DNA from: Octopus sinensis
Taxonomy: Eukaryota
NCBI RefSeq assembly: GCF_006345805.1
Contig: NW_021825300.1
Span: 1 to 16,104 of the forward strand
Length of the DNA stretch: 16,104 nt
Direction: 5' to 3'
The notes under the pieces: generated by a model
What the model saw: the letters and a program-made list of their open reading frames with translations, nothing else
Database searches by the model: none
Told to the model about the DNA's origin: nothing
Translations under genes and position numbers: made by a program
Part shown: positions 2,680 through 15,729 of the stretch, in pieces
How positions within the stretch are numbered: position 1 is the first letter of the stretch
Layout: each line of letters begins with the position of its first letter

Positions 2680-3331
2680 AATATAGCCAATATAACTGCT
2701 GTAATAAAATAATTGAGCTACTTTATAATTTCTCACGCTATGGTATTTTATCGTTCCTTGCAGGAAATGTACGTCTATGTCTGAAAAATGAGATAATGTT
2801 GGAATTTCAATTCAACATATTCTGGTTGAGTAAGTTCTCGCGTTTCTCTCATGCATCAATCACAAAAGCTTGGATAATTTGTTTTAAAGCTTTAGCTTGA
2901 TTCCAAATTTTCCACATGTCGAGATTACAGTATTTTGTATTTCAAAGCCCGACTATATTTTGATAAATTAGTTCCTATGAATTTCATAAGGTGTCAGAAA
3001 GTGTATGTATGTAGATTATATCATAATATAAGCCTGCTAATTGTTAAACCAATTATTCTAATTATTACTTCATTTACTTGTGATTCTTCACTCAATAAAC
3101 TATAAAGCTTGTCAAAAAGCTCCGAGTCAACGGATATCAACCATGGTTTATATAATTACATCATTAAGCGGTATTAGGGAAAGCAGGAAGTGCAAGATGT
3201 CTTATTGTTAATGTTCAGCAAAGATTCAGCAAATTTGCTTGTAGTATCATAGCTTATTACGTGCAATGATTGCCAGCATACATACTTCAAAGTGTAGAAA
3301 TGTTCAAGCGATACAAGTCCTGACTGGAGGT

Positions 3332-3753
3332 TTACTCTCTTTTACTCTTTTACTCTTTTACTTGTTTCAGTCATTTGACTGCGGCCATGCTGGAGCACCG
3401 CCTTTAGTCGAGCAAATCGACCCCGGGACTTATTCTTTGTAAGCCCAGTACTTATTCTATCGGTATCTTTTGCTGAACCGCTAAGTGACGGGGACGTAAA
3501 CACACCAGCATCGGTTGTCAAGCAATGCTAGGGGGACAAACACAGACACACAAACACACGCACATATATATATATATATATACATATATATACGACAGGC
3601 TTCTTTCAGTTTCCGTCTACCAAATTCACTCACAAGGCATTGGTCGGCCCGGGGCTATAGCAGAAGACACTTGCCCAAGATGCGACGCAGTGGGACTGAA
3701 CCCGGAACCATGTGGTTGGTAAGCAAACTACTTACCACACAGCCACTCCTGCG
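3332..3753 (-). mobile_element. SINE-A, full length (tRNA head, CORE-like domain, internal microsatellite, 3' domain, short-repeat tail)
   Basis: Minus strand: A-box-like tggctgtgtgg, B-box ggttcagtccc, CORE-like tcttgggcaagtgtctt, tail (gtaaaaga)n. Collinear with four other copies in the window. Confidence 0.92.
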
Positions 3754-4012
3754 TAAAATAAACGTAAAATATTTTCATTACTACTGTTTTAATTTTCGTC
3801 AAGTTGAGTTTTTCTCTCTGTTGCAGATGTATGTCATTTTATATCTCTAATACCACTTCGTTTGAATGATCTCTTGCATTTCTGAATGAATGTTTGTCAT
3901 ATGAGTTTCTCGAAGGCCACAGCAAACGTTTCAGAATATCTTAAAGAATATCTGATGTGTTGCTTGAATTATGAATACAGTGTACAATTTCCGCAAGTTA
4001 TCAATAGGTGTG

Positions 4013-4453: not shown

Positions 4454-4701
4454 TTCTTTACTCTTTACTTTTTTTACTTGTTTCAGTCATTTGAGTGCGG
4501 CCATGCTGGAGCACCACCTTTAGTCGAGCACATCGATCCCGGGACTTATTCTTTTGTAAGCCTAGTACTTATTCTATCGGTCTCTTTTGCCGAACCGCCG
4601 AGTTACGGGGACATAAACAATCTAGCATCGGCTGTCAAGCGATGTTGGGGGACAAACACAGACACACAAACATACACACACACACACACACATGTATATA
4701 T

Positions 4702-4777
<76 letters not shown>

Positions 4778-4949
4778 CATATATACGAAGGGCTTCTTTT
4801 AGTTTCCGTCTACCAAATCCCCTCACAAGGCTTTGGTCGGCGCGAGGCTATAGTAGAAGACATTTGCCCAAGGTGCCACGCAGTGGGACTGAACCCGGAA
4901 CCATGTGGATAGTAAGCAAGCTACTTACCACCCAGCCACTCCTGCGCCT
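4454..4949 (-). mobile_element. SINE-A, full length, with expanded internal (CA)n(TA)n of about 115 bp
   Basis: Collinear with 3332-3753 on both sides of the microsatellite; ends ...ccactcctgcgcct. Confidence 0.92.
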
Positions 4950-5121
4950 ATATATATATATATATAACATAGGATTATGAAACTTAATGTATTTTTTGAA
5001 ACGTCATTACAACATGTGCATAAAATGAAGTCAACATATGGGAATAAGCAAACACCGAAATTTACTTTCGGGTACAAAAAAAAAGAAGTAACTCCAGAAA
5101 CACAACAAATAGGTAATAATT

Positions 5122-6306: not shown

Positions 6307-6355
6307 AAATACAAATAATAATAATAATAATAATAACAACAACAACAACAACAAC

Positions 6356-6393
<38 letters not shown>

Positions 6394-6498
6394 TAATAAT
6401 AATGATAATAACAACAACAACAACACAACAACAACAGCAATAATAATAATAACAATAATAATAATAATAATAATAACAACAACAACAACAACAACAGC

Positions 6499-6542
<44 letters not shown>

Positions 6543-6558
6543 TAATAATAATAATAAT
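6307..6558. repeat. Compound trinucleotide microsatellite (AAT)n/(AAC)n with GAT/AGC variants
   Basis: Direct inspection; explains the poly-I/L/Y/C ORFs in the track. Confidence 0.97.
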
Positions 6559-7216: not shown

Positions 7217-7312
7217 GTAAATAATGTAAATAATGTAAATAATGTAAATAATGTAAATAATGTAATAATGTAATAATGTAATAATGTAAATAATGTAAAT
7301 AATGTATATAAT
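7217..7312. repeat. 9-bp minisatellite (GTAAATAAT)n: five 9-mers, three 8-mers, two 9-mers, one variant
   Basis: Units counted directly. Confidence 0.97.
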
Positions 7313-7390: not shown

Positions 7391-7608
7391 TCTTTCCTCT
7401 TTTATTTGTTTCAGTCATTTGACTGCGGCCATGCAAAGAACACTGCCTTTTAGTTGAATAAATCAACCCCAGGACTTATTCTTTGGAAACCTAGTACTTA
7501 TTCTGTCGGTCTCATTTGCCGAACCGCTAAGTGACGGGAACGTAAAGACACCAACATCGGTTGTCAAACGATTGTGAGGACAAACACAACCGCACAAATA
7601 CATTCTAT

Positions 7609-7657
<49 letters not shown>

Positions 7658-7809
7658 GACGGGCTTCTTTCAGTTTCCGTCAACCAAATCCACTCAGAAG
7701 CCTTTGGTTATAGTAGAAATTACTTGCCCAAAGTGACACGCAGTGGAACTGAACCCGGAACCATGCGGTTGAAAAGCAAGCTTCTTATCACACAGCCACT
7801 CTTGCGCCT
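7391..7809 (-). mobile_element. SINE-A, full length, small internal deletion in the core
   Basis: Collinear with 3332-3753; ggtcggcccggggctatag is reduced to ggttatag. Confidence 0.92.
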
Positions 7810-7885
7810 GCCATGGTAGATCGCTAGCTCTTACACGCATATTTTTTCTCTCCTTGTTTCTCTCCTTGTTTTTTTTTTCTGCGTA

Positions 7886-8170: not shown

Positions 8171-8304
8171 GGAGGGGAAACAAAGAAATGAAAAATAAGT
8201 GGATAGAATTACCAGTTTATTTGTATGTTACAAAAAAATGACATTTAAGAAAAATAACAGTGAAAATAAATTGGTTAGAAGTTGAAAGTTGAAAGAAAAA
8301 TATA

Positions 8305-8451
8305 TATTTCTTTACTACCCACAAGGGGCTAAACACAGAGAGGACAAACAAGAACAGACAAACAGATTAAGTCGATTACATCGACCCCAGTGCGTAACTG
8401 GTACTTAATTTATCGACCCCGAAAGGATGAAAGGCAAAGTCGACCTCGGCG
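8305..8451 (-). mobile_element. SINE-B young-type module, 5'-truncated, standalone
   Basis: Near-identical to the reverse complement of 10535-10679, including the unique tail (..tttagccccttgtgggtagtaaagaaata). Confidence 0.92.
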
Positions 8452-8754
8452 ATGGTAAAAAGAAAGAAAAGAATCTACATATATGTTTCAGTCGTATCAT
8501 CCTGTTGATGGGAATTTCAAAGCATTTTATTTAATGCTAAGGAAGTTGCCATATTCAAAATATATGATGGAAGGACTTCGTCAGGGCTCATGTAGAGCTC
8601 ATACAACTTAGGTAATCATTCTGTCTTACTTATGGAAACATGATGTGTAGTAAGTCGATGAGATTCGAACCAGGGATGTGAAGATGTGAAATTATGGAAA
8701 GGGCAGATAGACTTCACTCGCCTCTGCTAAAATCTATAGGAGCATAATCATTAA

Positions 8755-9875: not shown

Positions 9876-9970
9876 TGTATGTATGTATGTATGTATGTAT
9901 GTATGTATGTATGTATGTATGTATGTATGTATGTATGTATGTATGCATGTATGTATGTATGCATGTATGT
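9876..9970. repeat. (ATGT)n tetranucleotide microsatellite
   Basis: Near-perfect run. Confidence 0.97.
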
Positions 9971-10452: not shown

Positions 10453-10868
10453 GCGAACTGGCAGAATCGTTACCATGCTGGATGAAATGCTTAGCGGTAT
10501 TTCGTCTGCAGTTACGTTCTGAGTTCAAATTCCGCCGAGGTCGACTTTGCCTTTCATCCTTTCGGGGTCGATTAAATAAGTACCAGTTACGCACAGGGGT
10601 CGATATAATCGACTTAATCCCTTTGTCTGTCCTTGTTTGTCCTCTCTGTGTTTAGCGCCTTGTGGGTAGTAAAGAAATAGGTATTTCGTCCGTCTTTACG
10701 TTCTGAGTTCAAATTCCGCCGAGGTCAGCGTTGCCTTTCATTTTTTCGGAGTCTATAAATGAAGTATCAGTAAAACACTGGGGTCTGTCGTTGTAATTGA
10801 CTAGCCCCCTCCCAACAAATTTGAGGCCTTGTACCTATAGTAGAAAGAATTATTAAATAGAATGTAAT
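10453..10868 (+). mobile_element. Composite SINE-B: head + young 184-bp module + older body and tail
   Basis: GGTATTTCGTC at 10496-10506 and 10680-10690; B-box gagttcaaattcc appears twice; flanked by a 55-bp perfect direct repeat. Confidence 0.9.
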
Positions 10869-11025: not shown

Positions 11026-11206
11026 CGATAAGAGTGATATTCTCCCCTTTTGTACGGCACAATAAATATTTTCTATTGCGAAGGTTTAGAGGTGTCTTAA
11101 GCTCGATTGATGATCAGGTATTTAGTATCAGTCATATTCCATGGCATATACGTCGACGTAGTACGTAAACTCGTACTATAAACATTCAAACATCATCACA
11201 TCAACC

Positions 11207-11248
11207 GCTCTCTCTCTCCATCTCTCTCTCTCTCTCTCTCTTCAATCT

Positions 11249-11281
<33 letters not shown>
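11207..11281. repeat. (CT)n microsatellite
   Basis: Direct inspection. Confidence 0.95.
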
Positions 11282-11283
<2 letters not shown>

Positions 11284-11402
11284 CAAGTCTTTCACATGGA
11301 ATGTTTGCTCCTCTAAGTCATCTTGGTGTATAACTCAATATATCTTTATAGAAATATTATTATTTCTAAGTCTCTCTAAAAGAGACTACGGCAGTGGTAC
11401 TG

Positions 11403-11585
11403 GATATTAGCAATTATCGCCAAGCTAATACGACAGTTCAAAAACATAGGACTAAAGCTGCCGCTGATTAGCTCCAAGAGGCCATATAGCTAGCTAGAGG
11501 TGATGACCTCTTAGAGCTAATCAACGGCAGCTTTAGTCCTATATTTATGGACTGCCATATTAGCTTGGCGATAACTGTTAATATC
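11403..11585. repeat. Long ungapped inverted repeat: 83-bp arms (11403-11485 / 11503-11585), 17-nt loop
   Basis: Base-by-base comparison gives 10 differences and no indels between the arms. Confidence 0.95.
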
Positions 11586-11969
11586 AATATATCTTCCTTT
11601 GCTGTAAATTTCTGAAAAATTTGACTTGTATTCTGGAAAATACAAGCTATGACTGAGTGAACTTACTGTCCAAAGCATTCCAGCCATGCCCATCCTACAT
11701 TCTTGTCTATCTAGGGACTACTTCTTCAACATCTTGCACCTTTTTTTTCACTTCATGGTGTTGCCATACTTTCCAATATACAAATCGAAGTAGTGTATAG
11801 TAAAAACATTCAAACATTGTCACCAACTTTCCAAATCCTGCTGAATTTCACACGGAACATTTGGTCCTCCAAAGTTGACTTGGTGTATAAGTCGACCTAC
11901 CTGTCTTGGCTGTAAATTGTAATCAGAAACATTCGAATTGCTGGGAAATACAACCATTCCTGTTCAAGG

Positions 11970-12352
11970 CTGACAAAGAAGCTTGAGAGGCGGTTGGATG
12001 GAACCTACACTCGCCTCCTTATGAGAGCTCAAAATCTCTCGTGGAAGCGCCATCCAACCAAAATGCAAATATATGGGAAACTACCACCTGTGTCATCTCT
12101 TGTGAAAGGTAAGAGAGTCCAGTTTACTGGACATTGTTGTAGAGCTGAAAAAGAGGTAATTTCTACTCTTCTCCTCTGGAAGCCATCTACCCGTAATACC
12201 AGAGGGCGCAGACTTTCCTACCCTCATGTAATCTCCAGGGATACAGGCATCCAGCAACAGGACCTCCGTAATACTATGATGGACCGTGAAGTCTGGCGTA
12301 GCATGGTAAATTCCAGTGTCTCGACCACGGTCGTACAATGATGAAATGATGA
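11970..12352 (+). mobile_element. 5'-truncated RTE-clade LINE: open ORF C-terminus plus (TGA)n tail
   Basis: LTKKLERRLDGTYTRLLMRAQNLSWKRHPT...RVQFTGHCCR...LLLWKP...DREVWR matches the RTE post-RT C-terminal pattern (LD G.YTRLL...SW...GH..R...W...DR..WR). Stop at 12339-12341 runs into tgatgaaatgatga. Confidence 0.88.
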
Positions 12353-12699
12353 CAAAGACATAACTTTGCAGATGAGATGTGGCGCGTGTATCACAGATCC
12401 ACAAAAGGCGACTTTTCCTATCAATGTTGTGAGAATTCTCTAACTCGCCGGATATGTACTCATCTGTAATTTTCTGCTGGGATGATGAACGTTTCTACTC
12501 CGAGTTTCTGTACTAGTGGATTAGTCCTGCTGCCTTTAGTTCATGGAGAAAAGCCCCGTCCCCGGGAGTGTCTAACCAGGTGTTCTTATTCTAATCTCAT
12601 GTTATTATTTTCCATTTTGTCTGCGCACGTGATGTAGACAATTGTTCTTTTACCGTTTTCTGTAAGTATATAAATGTACGCATTGTGTATGTACAGACA

Positions 12700-13136: not shown

Positions 13137-13504
13137 CATATATATATACATATACATACATATATATATATCATAATATATATATAATATATATATATAT
13201 AATATATATAACATATACATATACATACACACATACTATATATATATATATATATATATATACAAACAACACGTACGCGCGCGCGCACATCATATATAAT
13301 CATTTTAAACTTCCGTTTTCTGTTCCTCATTCCACACTTCACTGATTATATTATATTAACATGATATATACCACCACCACCCAAACTCCCTTTTTCTCTC
13401 TCTTTCTCTTTTACCTCTGTCTATCATAATATAAGCATACATGTATTTATTTACAATGTATATATTTACATATGTATGTACTTGCATATATTTGTATATA
13501 CATA

Positions 13505-13600
<96 letters not shown>

Positions 13601-13670
13601 ATAATATATATATTATATATATATATATATTATATATAGATATATATATGACATAATGAATATATTTTTA
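12700..13670. repeat. Microsatellite field: (TA)/(TG) 12700-12855, (GA)/(GAAA) 12915-13012, (TA) 13105-13262, (TA) 13440-13670, with short unique spacers
   Basis: Direct inspection. Confidence 0.9.
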
Positions 13671-14304: not shown

Positions 14305-14483
14305 AGTTGGGGGCCAGTGGGTTACTTCGACCTCATTGCTCAGTTTGCGCTCAATTCATCGATCGCAAAACGATGAAATAGAAATTCGACCTGAGCGGCA
14401 TTTGAACTTAGAACGTAAATTCGGACGAAATGCCGCTAAGCAACTTTTTCCGGCTTGCTAACGATTCCGCCAGCTCGCCGCTT
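14305..14483 (-). mobile_element. SINE-B, head well preserved, core diverged
   Basis: atttgaacttagaacgtaaa...gacgaaatgccgctaagca...gctaacgattccgccagctcgccgc matches 15652-15727. Confidence 0.8.
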
Positions 14484-14494
14484 TATTTCTAATG

Positions 14495-14836
14495 CAGTAA
14501 TCCGTTGTCCTATCGCGGTTCACCTATCGCGGTTTATTATTTAAGCTCACTTCGCTTCCTCTGTTGTTTTGCATTTATAATAAAATAACTCTCTTTACTC
14601 TACTTTTTTACTCTTTTACTCTTTTACTTGTTTCAGTCATTTGACTGTGGCCATGCTGGAGTTCCCGCCTTCAGTCGAGCTCATCGACCCCAGGACTTAT
14701 TCTTTGTAAGCTTAGTACGTATTCTACCGCTAGGTTACGGGGACGTAAACACACCAGCATCGGTTGTCAAGCGATGTTGGGGGAACAAACACAAACACAC
14801 AAACATACACACGCACACACACACACACACACACAC

Positions 14837-14893
<57 letters not shown>

Positions 14894-15150
14894 GACGGGC
14901 TTCTCACAAGGCATTGGTTGGCCCAAGGCTATAGTAGAAGCCACTTGCCGAAGGTGTCACGCAGTTGGACTGAACCCGGAGCCATGTAGTTCGTAAGCAA
15001 GCTACTTTCCACACAGCCACTCCTACGCCTATATACAAATTATAAAAAAAATATATATATATAGAGTACTGTAGTGTTTCTACTTCGCGGATTTTCACCT
15101 TTCGCGAGGAGTTTTGGAACTGAACACCTATGATAGTCCACGAATTGCTG
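14495..15150. mobile_element. Degenerate Tigger/pogo-like MITE interrupted by SINE-A (14590-15030)
   Basis: Left end cagtaatccgttgtcctatcg versus reverse complement of right end cagcaattcgtggactatca (about 15 matches in 20, one gap); TA at 15151-52, TG at 14493-94; internal tcgcgg..cacct.tcgcg motif near both ends. CAGT ends and TA duplication are typical of this group. Confidence 0.5.
14590..15030 (-). mobile_element. SINE-A, both ends present, two internal deletions
   Basis: Collinear with other copies but lacks tcggtctcttttgccga and ttcagtttccgtctaccaaatcca. Confidence 0.9.
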
Positions 15151-15152
15151 TA

Positions 15153-15729
15153 TTATTAATAATACTGGTTTCAAATTTTGGCACAAGGCCAGCAATATCG
15201 GGTGAGTGGATAAGTACTCAGCTGGTACTTATTTTATCAACTCCCAAAGAGATGAAAGGCAAATCAACCTCGGCGGAATTTGACCTCAGAACGTAAAAAT
15301 TGACGAAATACCTATTTCTTTATTACCCACAAGGGGCTAAACATAGAGGGGACAAGCAAGGACAAACATAGGTATTAAGTCGATTACATCGACCCCAGTG
15401 CGTAACTGGTACTTAATTTATCGACCCCGAAAGGATGAAAGGAAAAGTCGACCTCGGTTGAATTTGAACTCAGAACGTAGCGGCAGATGAAAAATACCTA
15501 TTTCTTTATTACCTACAAGGGGCTAAACATAGAGGGGACAAACAAGGACAGACATAGGTATTAAGTCGATTACATCGACCGCAGTGCGTAACTGGTACTT
15601 AATTTATCGACTCCGAAAGGATGAAAGGCAAAGTCGACCTCGGCGGAATTTGAACTCAGAACGTAGCGGCAGACGAAATACCGCTAAGCATTTCGCCAGG
15701 CGTGCTAACGATTCTGCCAGCTCGCCCTT
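15153..15729 (-). mobile_element. Composite SINE-B: head + two tandem young 184/186-bp modules + older body and (ATT) tail
   Basis: Junction motif (gacgaaatacc on +) ends at 15312, 15498 and 15682; spacings 186 and 184. Confidence 0.92.

What the first reader, a model, noticed from the sequence alone, without database searches (positions are those of the whole stretch)
11403..11585. Ungapped 83-bp-stem hairpin with mismatches biased to G-U on the minus strand
The arms differ at 10 positions with no indels; nine are transitions. Read on the minus strand, 7 become G-U wobbles (80/83 positions paired); on the plus strand only 2 do. Seven of nine is suggestive only (one-sided binomial about 0.09). 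No TSD or recognisable TIR is evident at the arm ends, it matches none of the window's repeats, and the loop contains its own palindrome (tagctagcta, 11487-11496). Established: long G-U-rich hairpins are Dicer substrates (Drosophila hpRNAs) and ADAR substrates, and coleoid cephalopods have extensive A-to-I editing and expanded miRNA repertoires. Candidates: endo-siRNA/miRNA precursor, editing-inducer element, or foldback MITE.
Basis: partly seen in the sequence, partly recalled or inferred. Interest (0 to 1): 0.72.

Follow-up and report, generated by a model that had tools for sequence, protein, structure and literature searches.

The report
Hairpin-bodied mobile-element insertion with target duplication
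The long hairpin is real, but it is the body of a 239-base piece of mobile DNA that inserted into an older repeat and duplicated 10-12 bases of its target; nothing shown here points to an RNA gene, so it is most likely an ordinary decaying transposon copy.

Summary
Arms 11403-11485 and 11503-11585 are 83 nt, ungapped, with 10 mismatches, 9 of them transitions. The minus strand has 7 G-U wobbles and the plus strand 2. The hairpin is part of a 239-bp unit (11347-11585) flanked by a perfect direct repeat, AATATATCTT (11337-11346 and 11586-11595; up to 12 bp). A paralogous copy of the flanking ~190-bp repeat (11765-11953) lacks the unit and has a single copy of the site. So this is an insertion with a target-site duplication. 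The unit has a 56-nt single-copy end with two mini stem-loops, then the hairpin flush with the other end. It has no terminal inverted repeats, so it is not a classical MITE. Insertion by target-primed reverse transcription is my preferred but unproven mechanism. The G-U bias is not significant (two-sided p=0.18) and shows no ADAR neighbour signature. No Rfam family reaches threshold. The sequence is absent from published octopus miRNA supplements, and mollusks are reported to lack an endo-siRNA pathway. Copy number could not be tested, because the collections here hold almost none of this genome. If transcribed, it would be a good ADAR substrate. Interest is low to moderate.

The parts
11335..11346 (.). 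Left copy of the target-site duplication (core AATATATCTT 11337-11346; maximal TCAATATATCTT 11335-11346)
   Evidence: The 10-mer and the 12-mer each occur exactly twice in the 16-kb window, at the two junctions defined independently by the A/B alignment.
11347..11402 (.). 56-nt single-copy end of the inserted unit, with two mini stem-loops (TAGAAATA/TATTTCTA 11349-11356 with 11361-11368; AGTCTCT/AGAGACT 11369-11375 with 11381-11387). It is AT-rich and contains (AAT)3 on the minus strand.
   Evidence: It has no counterpart in paralog B. The fold shows both mini-hairpins. It has no mirror copy at the right end of the unit.
11403..11485 (.). Left arm of the 83-nt inverted repeat
11486..11502 (.). 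17-nt loop containing the palindrome TAGCTAGCTA (11487-11496), which is offset from the symmetry axis at 11494
11503..11585 (.). Right arm of the inverted repeat, flush with the right TSD copy. Its last two bases (TC, 11584-11585) may belong to the TSD instead.
11586..11595 (.). Right copy of the target-site duplication (AATATATCTT; maximal 11584-11595)
11133..11645 (+). Host repeat copy A (11133-11346 plus 11596-11645), interrupted by the 239-bp unit and by a (CT)37 microsatellite at 11208-11281
   Evidence: A is collinear with B. The joined flanks align at 80% identity (82/102), and 0 of 2000 shuffles reach the score for the left block, the right block or the joined sequence.
11765..11953 (+). 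Paralogous copy B of the same ~190-bp repeat. The uninterrupted 'empty site' is TCGACCTACCTG at 11892-11903.
   Evidence: There is no LINE homology here and no homology beyond the ~190-bp unit.

Best explanation
The hairpin is the body of a 239-bp non-autonomous mobile-element insertion (11347-11585). It landed in one copy of an older ~190-bp repeat and duplicated 10-12 bp of the AT-rich target (shown). The unit has a 56-nt single-copy end with two small stem-loops, followed by an 83-bp-stem inverted repeat that ends exactly at the opposite junction. The unit has no terminal inverted repeats (shown). I infer that it was inserted by borrowed LINE machinery through target-primed reverse transcription. 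Two sub-cases are open: it is a copy of a hairpin-bearing retroposon or a 5'-truncated retroelement, or the RT folded back on its own cDNA and so created the inverted duplication. Since insertion it has drifted neutrally. The arms are 12% diverged (K2P 0.136), less than the 20% between host copies A and B, and almost all changes are transitions. The 7:2 excess of minus-strand G-U is sampling noise (inferred). It has no dedicated function. If a host transcript reads through it, the RNA would fold into ~80 bp of near-perfect duplex and be hyper-edited by ADAR (inferred from the literature).
For: The TSD and empty site rest on the collinear A/B alignment across the junction (80% identity, 0/2000 shuffles) and on a 10-12-mer found only at the two junctions. 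No TIR lies at the unit ends, and the 56-nt end is not mirrored. The TSD length fits endonuclease/TPRT insertions. A 5'-truncated RTE-like LINE 390 bp downstream carries its own 9-bp flanking repeat, so that machinery acted in this locus. The timeline is coherent: arm divergence is 0.12 against 0.20 for A/B, and an intact TSD is expected with probability 0.21-0.28 at that divergence. The G-U bias has two-sided p = 0.18. The seven wobble Gs have 5' neighbours A, C, G, T, A, T, G, so there is no ADAR-type depletion of 5' G. No Rfam family reaches its gathering score; the sub-threshold hits are to unrelated plant, insect and mammalian miRNA hairpins on both strands. In the literature, a palindromic ~200-bp repeat in Xenopus is heavily hyper-edited and octopus shows the strongest hyper-editing signal (PMC5625713).
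Against: No second copy of the unit was found anywhere, so 'family' is unproven. The searches had almost no power, because the collections hold almost none of this genome. No Pol III A/B boxes or tRNA-like head were found. The unit has no poly(A) and no tail shared with the RTE-like LINE or the SINEs in the window. Its orientation is therefore unknown, and TPRT is an inference from TSD length and the absence of TIRs. A 10-12-bp TSD is also near the Mutator range. The empty site comes from a paralog, not an ortholog.
Confidence: 0.65

Rival explanations
1. It is a foldback or MITE-type DNA transposon (for example Mutator-like, with 9-11-bp TSDs and long TIRs) that moved by cut-and-paste. The long inverted repeat would be its TIR pair.
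For: A long, near-perfect inverted repeat makes up 77% of the unit. The unit is small and non-coding. The TSD length of 10-12 bp is close to the Mutator range. Drosophila FB elements can have arms of unequal length (my own knowledge).
Against: The left arm starts 56 nt inside the left junction, and the unit's two ends share no inverted repeat. No TSD directly flanks the arms. No transposase relative or sister copy is in the window.
Confidence: 0.17
2. It is a one-off event rather than a family member. The inverted duplication was made at insertion by snap-back synthesis: an RT or a repair polymerase copied about 150 nt of template, folded back on the nascent strand and copied 83 nt of it.
For: The architecture is what snap-back predicts: a single-copy primer-proximal segment, then arm, short loop and arm, with the second arm ending at the junction. 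The loop holds a self-complementary TAGCTAGCTA that could seed fold-back. Arm divergence below A/B divergence is compatible with arms that were identical at birth. No other copy was found, though that is weak evidence.
Against: The palindrome is offset from the symmetry axis by about 2.5 nt, so it is not the actual fold-back point. The template source is unknown. This is counted inside the TPRT umbrella of the best explanation and cannot be separated from a family origin without the genome.
Confidence: 0.1
3. It is a functional hairpin RNA gene on the minus strand (miRNA, hpRNA or endo-siRNA precursor, or an ADAR-recruiting editing-inducer element), with G-U wobbles retained by selection for pairing.
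For: Seven of 9 transitions are G-U on the minus strand, and the minus-strand fold is 17.5 kcal/mol more stable. Hairpin-forming TE insertions are a known source of new miRNAs, as with hsa-mir-548 from Made1 (PMC1784062, listed). Octopus has strong hyper-editing.
Against: The bias has two-sided p = 0.18, and strand-asymmetric mutation would give the same pattern. An 83-bp near-perfect stem is unlike animal pre-miRNAs. Nothing reaches an Rfam gathering score. The sequence is absent from the octopus miRNA supplements. Mollusks are reported to lack a dedicated siRNA pathway. No exon lies nearby for an inducer element to serve. The minus strand carries T5 and T4 runs. The element is a TE-type insertion into another repeat.
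Confidence: 0.08

Closest known systems
Palindromic MITEs that fold on themselves (for example the ~200-bp Harbinger-derived repeat of Xenopus tropicalis; Made1/hsa-mir-548 in human)
   Same: It is a short, non-coding, mobile unit whose body is a long self-complementary repeat with a small loop. It is expected to give tight dsRNA and ADAR hyper-editing when transcribed (PMC5625713).
   Different: Those elements have inverted repeats that reach both ends and short, superfamily-specific TSDs (TWA or TA). Here one end is a 56-nt single-copy segment, the TSD is 10-12 bp, and the unit has no TIR.
SINEs and 5'-truncated LINE insertions made by target-primed reverse transcription
   Same: The TSD is about 10 bp at an AT-rich target, there are no TIRs, the size is a few hundred bp, and small stem-loops sit next to an AT-rich, (AAT)-containing end. 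A TPRT-type LINE insertion lies 390 bp away.
   Different: No Pol III promoter boxes or tRNA-like head were found, and no poly(A) or LINE-shared tail. An 83-bp hairpin body is not a usual SINE feature.
Drosophila hpRNA loci (endo-siRNA hairpins)
   Same: Both are long, nearly perfect intramolecular hairpins with G-U pairs.
   Different: hpRNAs need a Dicer-2/AGO2-type pathway, which is reported absent in mollusks (PMC12479628). No target complementarity or small RNAs are known here.
Foldback (FB) elements and Mutator-like MITEs
   Same: Both have long inverted repeats, and their TSDs of about 9-11 bp are near the length seen here.
   Different: FB arms are built of tandem sub-repeats and are terminal. 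No sub-repeats are present here, and the left arm is internal.

Membership tests
MITE / foldback DNA transposon | Terminal inverted repeats at both ends of the mobile unit | tested here: not met
   The unit ends (TATAGAAAT... and ...TTAATATC) are not inverted copies of each other. The left arm begins 56 nt inside the left junction.
MITE / foldback DNA transposon | Fixed-length TSD directly abutting the TIRs | tested here: not met
   No direct repeat flanks the arms themselves (AGTGGTACTG on the left against AATATATCTT on the right). The TSD that does exist encloses the larger 239-bp unit.
MITE / foldback DNA transposon | Multi-copy family in the genome | not testable with these tools
   The source genome is not in any searchable collection. 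All searches were negative but had almost no power.
SINE / TPRT retroposon | Target-site duplication of variable length (about 5-20 bp) and no TIRs | tested here: met
   The perfect TSD is 10-12 bp, the paralog supplies an empty site, and the unit has no TIR.
SINE / TPRT retroposon | Pol III head derived from tRNA, 7SL or 5S, with A/B boxes | tested here: not met
   ARAGORN finds nothing. Rfam finds no tRNA, 7SL or 5S match. Reading the sequence by eye shows no convincing A/B boxes.
SINE / TPRT retroposon | 3' tail: poly(A), simple repeat, or a tail shared with a partner LINE | tested here: inconclusive
   The minus-strand end ...AGAAATAATAATATTTCTATA is AT-rich and contains (AAT)3 after two stem-loops. 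It shows no similarity to the RTE-like LINE tail or to the SINE tails in the window.
Animal miRNA precursor | Match to a curated family, or a Drosha/Dicer-type hairpin (about 60-70 nt with an imperfect stem of about 33 bp) | tested here: not met
   The best Rfam scores are 35-41 bits against gathering scores of 70-140, to unrelated families and on both strands. The stem is 83 bp and near-perfect. The sequence is absent from the supplements of PMC9699675.
Animal miRNA precursor | Discrete 21-23-nt reads with 2-nt 3' overhangs; conservation in orthologues | not testable with these tools
   No small-RNA data and no orthologous genomes are available here.
hpRNA / endo-siRNA locus | A host siRNA pathway (siDicer, siAgo) that processes long hairpins | not testable with these tools
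   Literature only: PMC12479628 reports no siAgo, no siDicer and no endo-siRNAs in mollusks, including O. bimaculoides.
ADAR substrate / editing-inducer element | Long, near-perfect intramolecular dsRNA | tested here: met
   80/83 positions pair on the minus strand and 75/83 on the plus strand. MFE is -132.8 and -115.3 kcal/mol.
ADAR substrate / editing-inducer element | Transcription, A-to-G clusters in RNA, and a nearby edited target site | not testable with these tools
   No RNA data are available. No exon-like ORF appears in the 16-kb window apart from TE remnants.
Hammerhead ribozyme (HH9) | Catalytic core CUGAUGA ... GAAA around three helices, with a score at or above the gathering score | tested here: not met
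   The score is 25.2 bits against a gathering score of 52, and the hit is lost when the stretch is narrowed. The sequence reads CUGAUUA, and no GAAA box follows helix II (read).

The most novel reading that the evidence does not exclude
The unit represents an undescribed cephalopod retroposon type, or a snap-back retro-insertion, that delivers a ready-made ~80-bp dsRNA hairpin in one TPRT step. Retroposition itself would then seed new ADAR hyper-editing sites, and possibly new hairpin-RNA genes, in octopus transcripts. On that reading the minus-strand G-U excess would be an early sign of selection or of strand-specific mutation.
Probability: 0.12. Interest if true: 0.55.

Novelty: new member of a known kind. 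Interest (0 to 1): 0.25.

Why it matters
The practical value is as a correction. A striking 83-bp hairpin with an apparent strand-specific G-U bias turns out to be a mobile-element insertion, once the target duplication 56 nt outside the arm and the empty paralogous site are seen. The bias is not significant. Self-folding repeats are the main source of ADAR hyper-editing substrates (PMC5625713), and octopus is an extreme editor. If this unit proves to be one of a family, that family would be worth cataloguing as a source of editing clusters and possibly of young hairpin RNAs. The asymmetric architecture (single-copy end plus flush hairpin, about 10-bp TSD, no TIRs) would also be a mildly unusual class of retroposon.

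Tried and rejected
**Searches for other copies**
1. A protein search with a concatenated six-frame translation of the unit gave 0 hits at E<=10.
2. Exact look-ups of the 58-aa and 115-aa window ORFs found nothing on record.
3. phmmer of the 39-aa hairpin ORF against 1.84 billion representatives gave 0 hits.
4. An 18-mer scan of metagenome contigs and a 17-mer scan of viral contigs gave 9 and 5 loci. All are chance matches of 17-25 nt only.
5. A sequence-string search of 8.3 million papers gave 0 hits, and the octopus miRNA paper supplements gave 0.

**An indirect route to genome DNA**
- I sampled DNA through relatives of the LINE. The long contigs L015-L017 share only the LINE, at 72% identity, and none of the window's SINEs, so they come from a different species and hold no copy of the unit. 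These negatives have almost no power.

**Readings rejected**
- Hammerhead or retrozyme: the core is not present.
- Arms derived from the window's SINEs or from the A/B repeat: no similarity beyond shuffles.
- A and B as LINE fragments, which was my first reading. LINE homology starts only at 11974, and the duplication does not extend beyond about 190 bp.
- G-U wobbles as fossil A-to-I edits of a retrotransposed RNA: the 5'-neighbour pattern shows no ADAR signature.

**Not pursued**
- TSDs of the older SINE copies, looked at as a yardstick for TPRT in this genome, were too decayed or too microsatellite-rich to read.
- I ran no further search on a SINE calibrator. With only one close LINE relative in the database, the resulting bound on copy number would have been too loose to matter.

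Full report
**1. The observation**

The arms are 11403-11485 and 11503-11585, 83 nt each and 88% complementary, with a 17-nt spacer.

A base-by-base comparison gives 10 ungapped mismatches, 9 transitions and one A/T transversion. On the minus strand 7 of these become G-U, 2 C-A and 1 U-U. On the plus strand only 2 become G-U. Pairing stops at the arm ends.

Folding gives -115.3 kcal/mol for the plus strand (z = -16.2) and -132.8 kcal/mol for the minus strand (z = -21.6). None of 200 shuffles comes near either value. The loop palindrome TAGCTAGCTA (11487-11496) is present but sits about 2.5 nt off the symmetry axis. So the structure is real and far beyond chance.

**2.

The repeat finder on the surrounding kilobase returned three short direct-repeat pairs. 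They are collinear but have decreasing offsets: 11174 to 11798, 11315 to 11872 and 11590 to 11898.

Alignment shows that a segment A (11133-11346 plus 11596-11645) is a paralog of a segment B (11765-11953). A is interrupted twice, by a (CT)37 microsatellite and by a 249-bp block that contains the hairpin.

With the block removed, the joined A flanks align to B straight across the junction. Identity is 82/102, or 80%. None of 2000 shuffles reaches the score for the left flank, the right flank or the joined sequence.

The block is bounded by a perfect direct repeat, AATATATCTT, at 11337-11346 and 11586-11595. It can be extended to TCAATATATCTT at 11335-11346 and 11584-11595. Both the 10-mer and the 12-mer occur only at these two places in the 16-kb window. 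B has a single, diverged copy of the site, TCGACCTACCTG at 11892-11903.

This is the classical signature of a mobile-element insertion: a target-site duplication plus an empty site. Here the empty site is supplied by a paralog.

**3. Anatomy of the inserted unit**

The unit is 11347-11585, 239 bp (237 bp if the TSD is 12 bp). It begins with a 56-nt single-copy segment that forms two mini stem-loops:
- 11349-11356 pairs with 11361-11368.
- 11369-11375 pairs with 11381-11387.

The 183-nt hairpin follows, and its right arm ends exactly at the right TSD. The two ends of the unit are not inverted copies of each other, and the 56 nt is not mirrored. The long inverted repeat is therefore not a pair of terminal inverted repeats in the MITE sense.

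The unit has no similarity beyond shuffles to the window's two SINE families or to the A/B repeat. It has no tRNA-like part. The minus strand carries a T5 run (plus coordinates 11440-11444) and a T4 run (11378-11381). The plus strand has none.

**4. Context**

The window is repeat-rich eukaryotic DNA of the octopus type. It has microsatellites throughout, a tRNA-derived SINE in four copies, and a 186-bp SINE-like unit in tandem and inverted copies.

I first took A and B for LINE fragments, which was wrong. Comparison with the closest relative found (L018, 88% nt identity) shows LINE homology only from 11974 to about 12355. That stretch is a 5'-truncated RTE-like insertion, flanked by its own 9-bp repeat TGACAAAGA. 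A and B are copies of an unclassified ~190-bp repeat with no homology beyond that length. No exon-like ORF is visible in the window.

**5. Mechanism**

Three points are shown: the insertion, the TSD, and the absence of TIRs at the unit ends. The rest is inferred.

A perfect TSD of about 10-12 bp at an AT-rich target, without TIRs, points to endonuclease nicking and target-primed reverse transcription by LINE machinery. That machinery demonstrably acted 390 bp away.

The asymmetric layout (single-copy end, arm, short loop, arm flush with the far junction) fits two sub-cases:
- A copy, possibly 5'-truncated, of a retroelement that carries such a hairpin.
- A snap-back event, in which the polymerase folded back on its nascent strand.

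I cannot separate these without other copies. A Mutator-like or foldback DNA transposon remains possible, because the TSD length is near that range. But the defining feature, TIRs at both ends abutting the TSD, was tested and not met.

The timing is coherent. The arms differ by 12% (K2P 0.136) and A and B by 20%. At that divergence an intact 10-12-bp TSD is expected with probability 0.21-0.28.

**6. The G-U bias**

Any transition in a Watson-Crick pair gives G-U on one strand and C-A on the other. So 7:2 is a binomial draw, with one-sided p = 0.09 and two-sided p = 0.18. That is before allowing for the many features a reader can inspect.

The same pattern would follow from strand-asymmetric C-to-T or A-to-G mutation. 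I also tested whether the seven wobble Gs could be fossil A-to-I edits of a retrotransposed RNA. Their 5' neighbours are A, C, G, T, A, T, G, so 2 of 7 have the disfavoured 5' G, against 7 of 46 among the unedited As. There is no ADAR signature.

Nine of 10 changes being transitions is also unremarkable (p about 0.10 at a 2:1 expectation).

**7. RNA-gene readings**

- Rfam at gathering thresholds finds nothing in the window.
- Permissive searches give only 20-41-bit matches, against gathering scores of 36-140. The matches are to unrelated plant, insect and mammalian miRNA hairpins on both strands, as any long hairpin would give.
- A 25-bit Hammerhead_HH9 match lacks the catalytic core and vanishes on a narrower stretch.
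- Three 13-14-nt cores conserved in both arms, searched in both alphabets, are absent from the supplements of the octopus miRNA survey (PMC9699675) and from all searchable paper texts.
- A survey of 32 mollusks, including O. bimaculoides, reports no siAgo, no siDicer and no endo-siRNAs (PMC12479628). That weighs against a Drosophila-type hpRNA.
- An 83-bp near-perfect stem is not a Drosha-type substrate (my own knowledge).

What remains is a generic inference. If a host transcript reads through the unit, it will be an excellent ADAR substrate. A palindromic ~200-bp repeat is the most edited family in Xenopus, and octopus has the strongest hyper-editing signal among 21 species (PMC5625713).

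**8. Copy number**

All of the following were negative or chance-level:
- the six-frame protein search;
- the exact-ORF look-ups;
- phmmer against 1.84 billion representatives;
- the exact-word scans of the metagenome and viral collections.

The negatives mean little. The RTE-like ORF, which belongs to a family that should have many genomic copies, found only 49 relatives, and just one of them is above 80% identity. The long contigs retrieved share none of the window's SINEs. The collections therefore hold almost none of this genome.

**9. Verdict**

The hairpin is real. It is best read as the body of a TE-type insertion that is decaying neutrally. The G-U asymmetry is not evidence of function. 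The finding is a new member of a known kind (a self-folding non-autonomous mobile element) with a mildly unusual asymmetric architecture. I score interest at 0.25.

The most novel reading left open is a hairpin-delivering retroposon or snap-back insertion that seeds dsRNA and editing sites. I give it about 0.12 probability.

Noticed in passing
window 11974-12358: A 5'-truncated RTE-like LINE lies on the + strand. It has a 115-aa ORF remnant (11994-12341) and a (TGA/ATGA)-type tail, and it is flanked by a 9-bp direct repeat TGACAAAGA (11971-11979 and 12350-12358). It is 88% nt identical to a 576-bp ENA metagenome contig (L018, ERZ27289496). LINE homology stops sharply at 11974.
   Followed up: partly
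window 11133-11645 and 11765-11953: Two direct copies, about 80% identical, of an unclassified ~190-bp repeat. Homology does not extend beyond the unit. Copy A also carries a (CT)37 microsatellite (11208-11281) that copy B lacks.
   Followed up: partly
window 15222-15725, 10453-10790, 8298-8483, 14335-14434: A 186-bp SINE-like unit with a tRNA-like B-box region occurs as 2.5 tandem copies and as inverted copies 2-4.8 kb apart (up to 234 nt at 91% and 154 nt at 94% complementarity). If co-transcribed, these pairs would form longer dsRNA than the hairpin under study.
   Followed up: no
window ~3330-3760, 4470-4950, 7400-7810, 14620-15030: Four copies of a tRNA-derived SINE lie in minus orientation. 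Each has an internal (CA)n(TA)n microsatellite of variable length and a (CTCTTTTA)n tail as read on the plus strand.
   Followed up: partly
window 6314-6558, 7217-7312, 9876-9970, 13441-13667: Long microsatellites and minisatellites: (AAT)82, (GTAAATAAT)11, (TGTA)24 and a 16-bp AT-rich unit in about 14 copies. (TA)n tracts recur throughout and give many spurious inverted-repeat calls.
   Followed up: no
L015-L017 (ENA ERZ25072740, contigs of 33-50 kb): A long-read 'metagenome' assembly contains low-coverage eukaryotic contigs. They are dense in LINE RT/endonuclease, Helitron/PIF1, integrase and DDE_Tnp_4 remnants, and one carries an Ets-domain ORF. They share the RTE-like LINE tail with the window at only 72% nt identity, so they come from a different, probably molluscan, host.
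   Followed up: no
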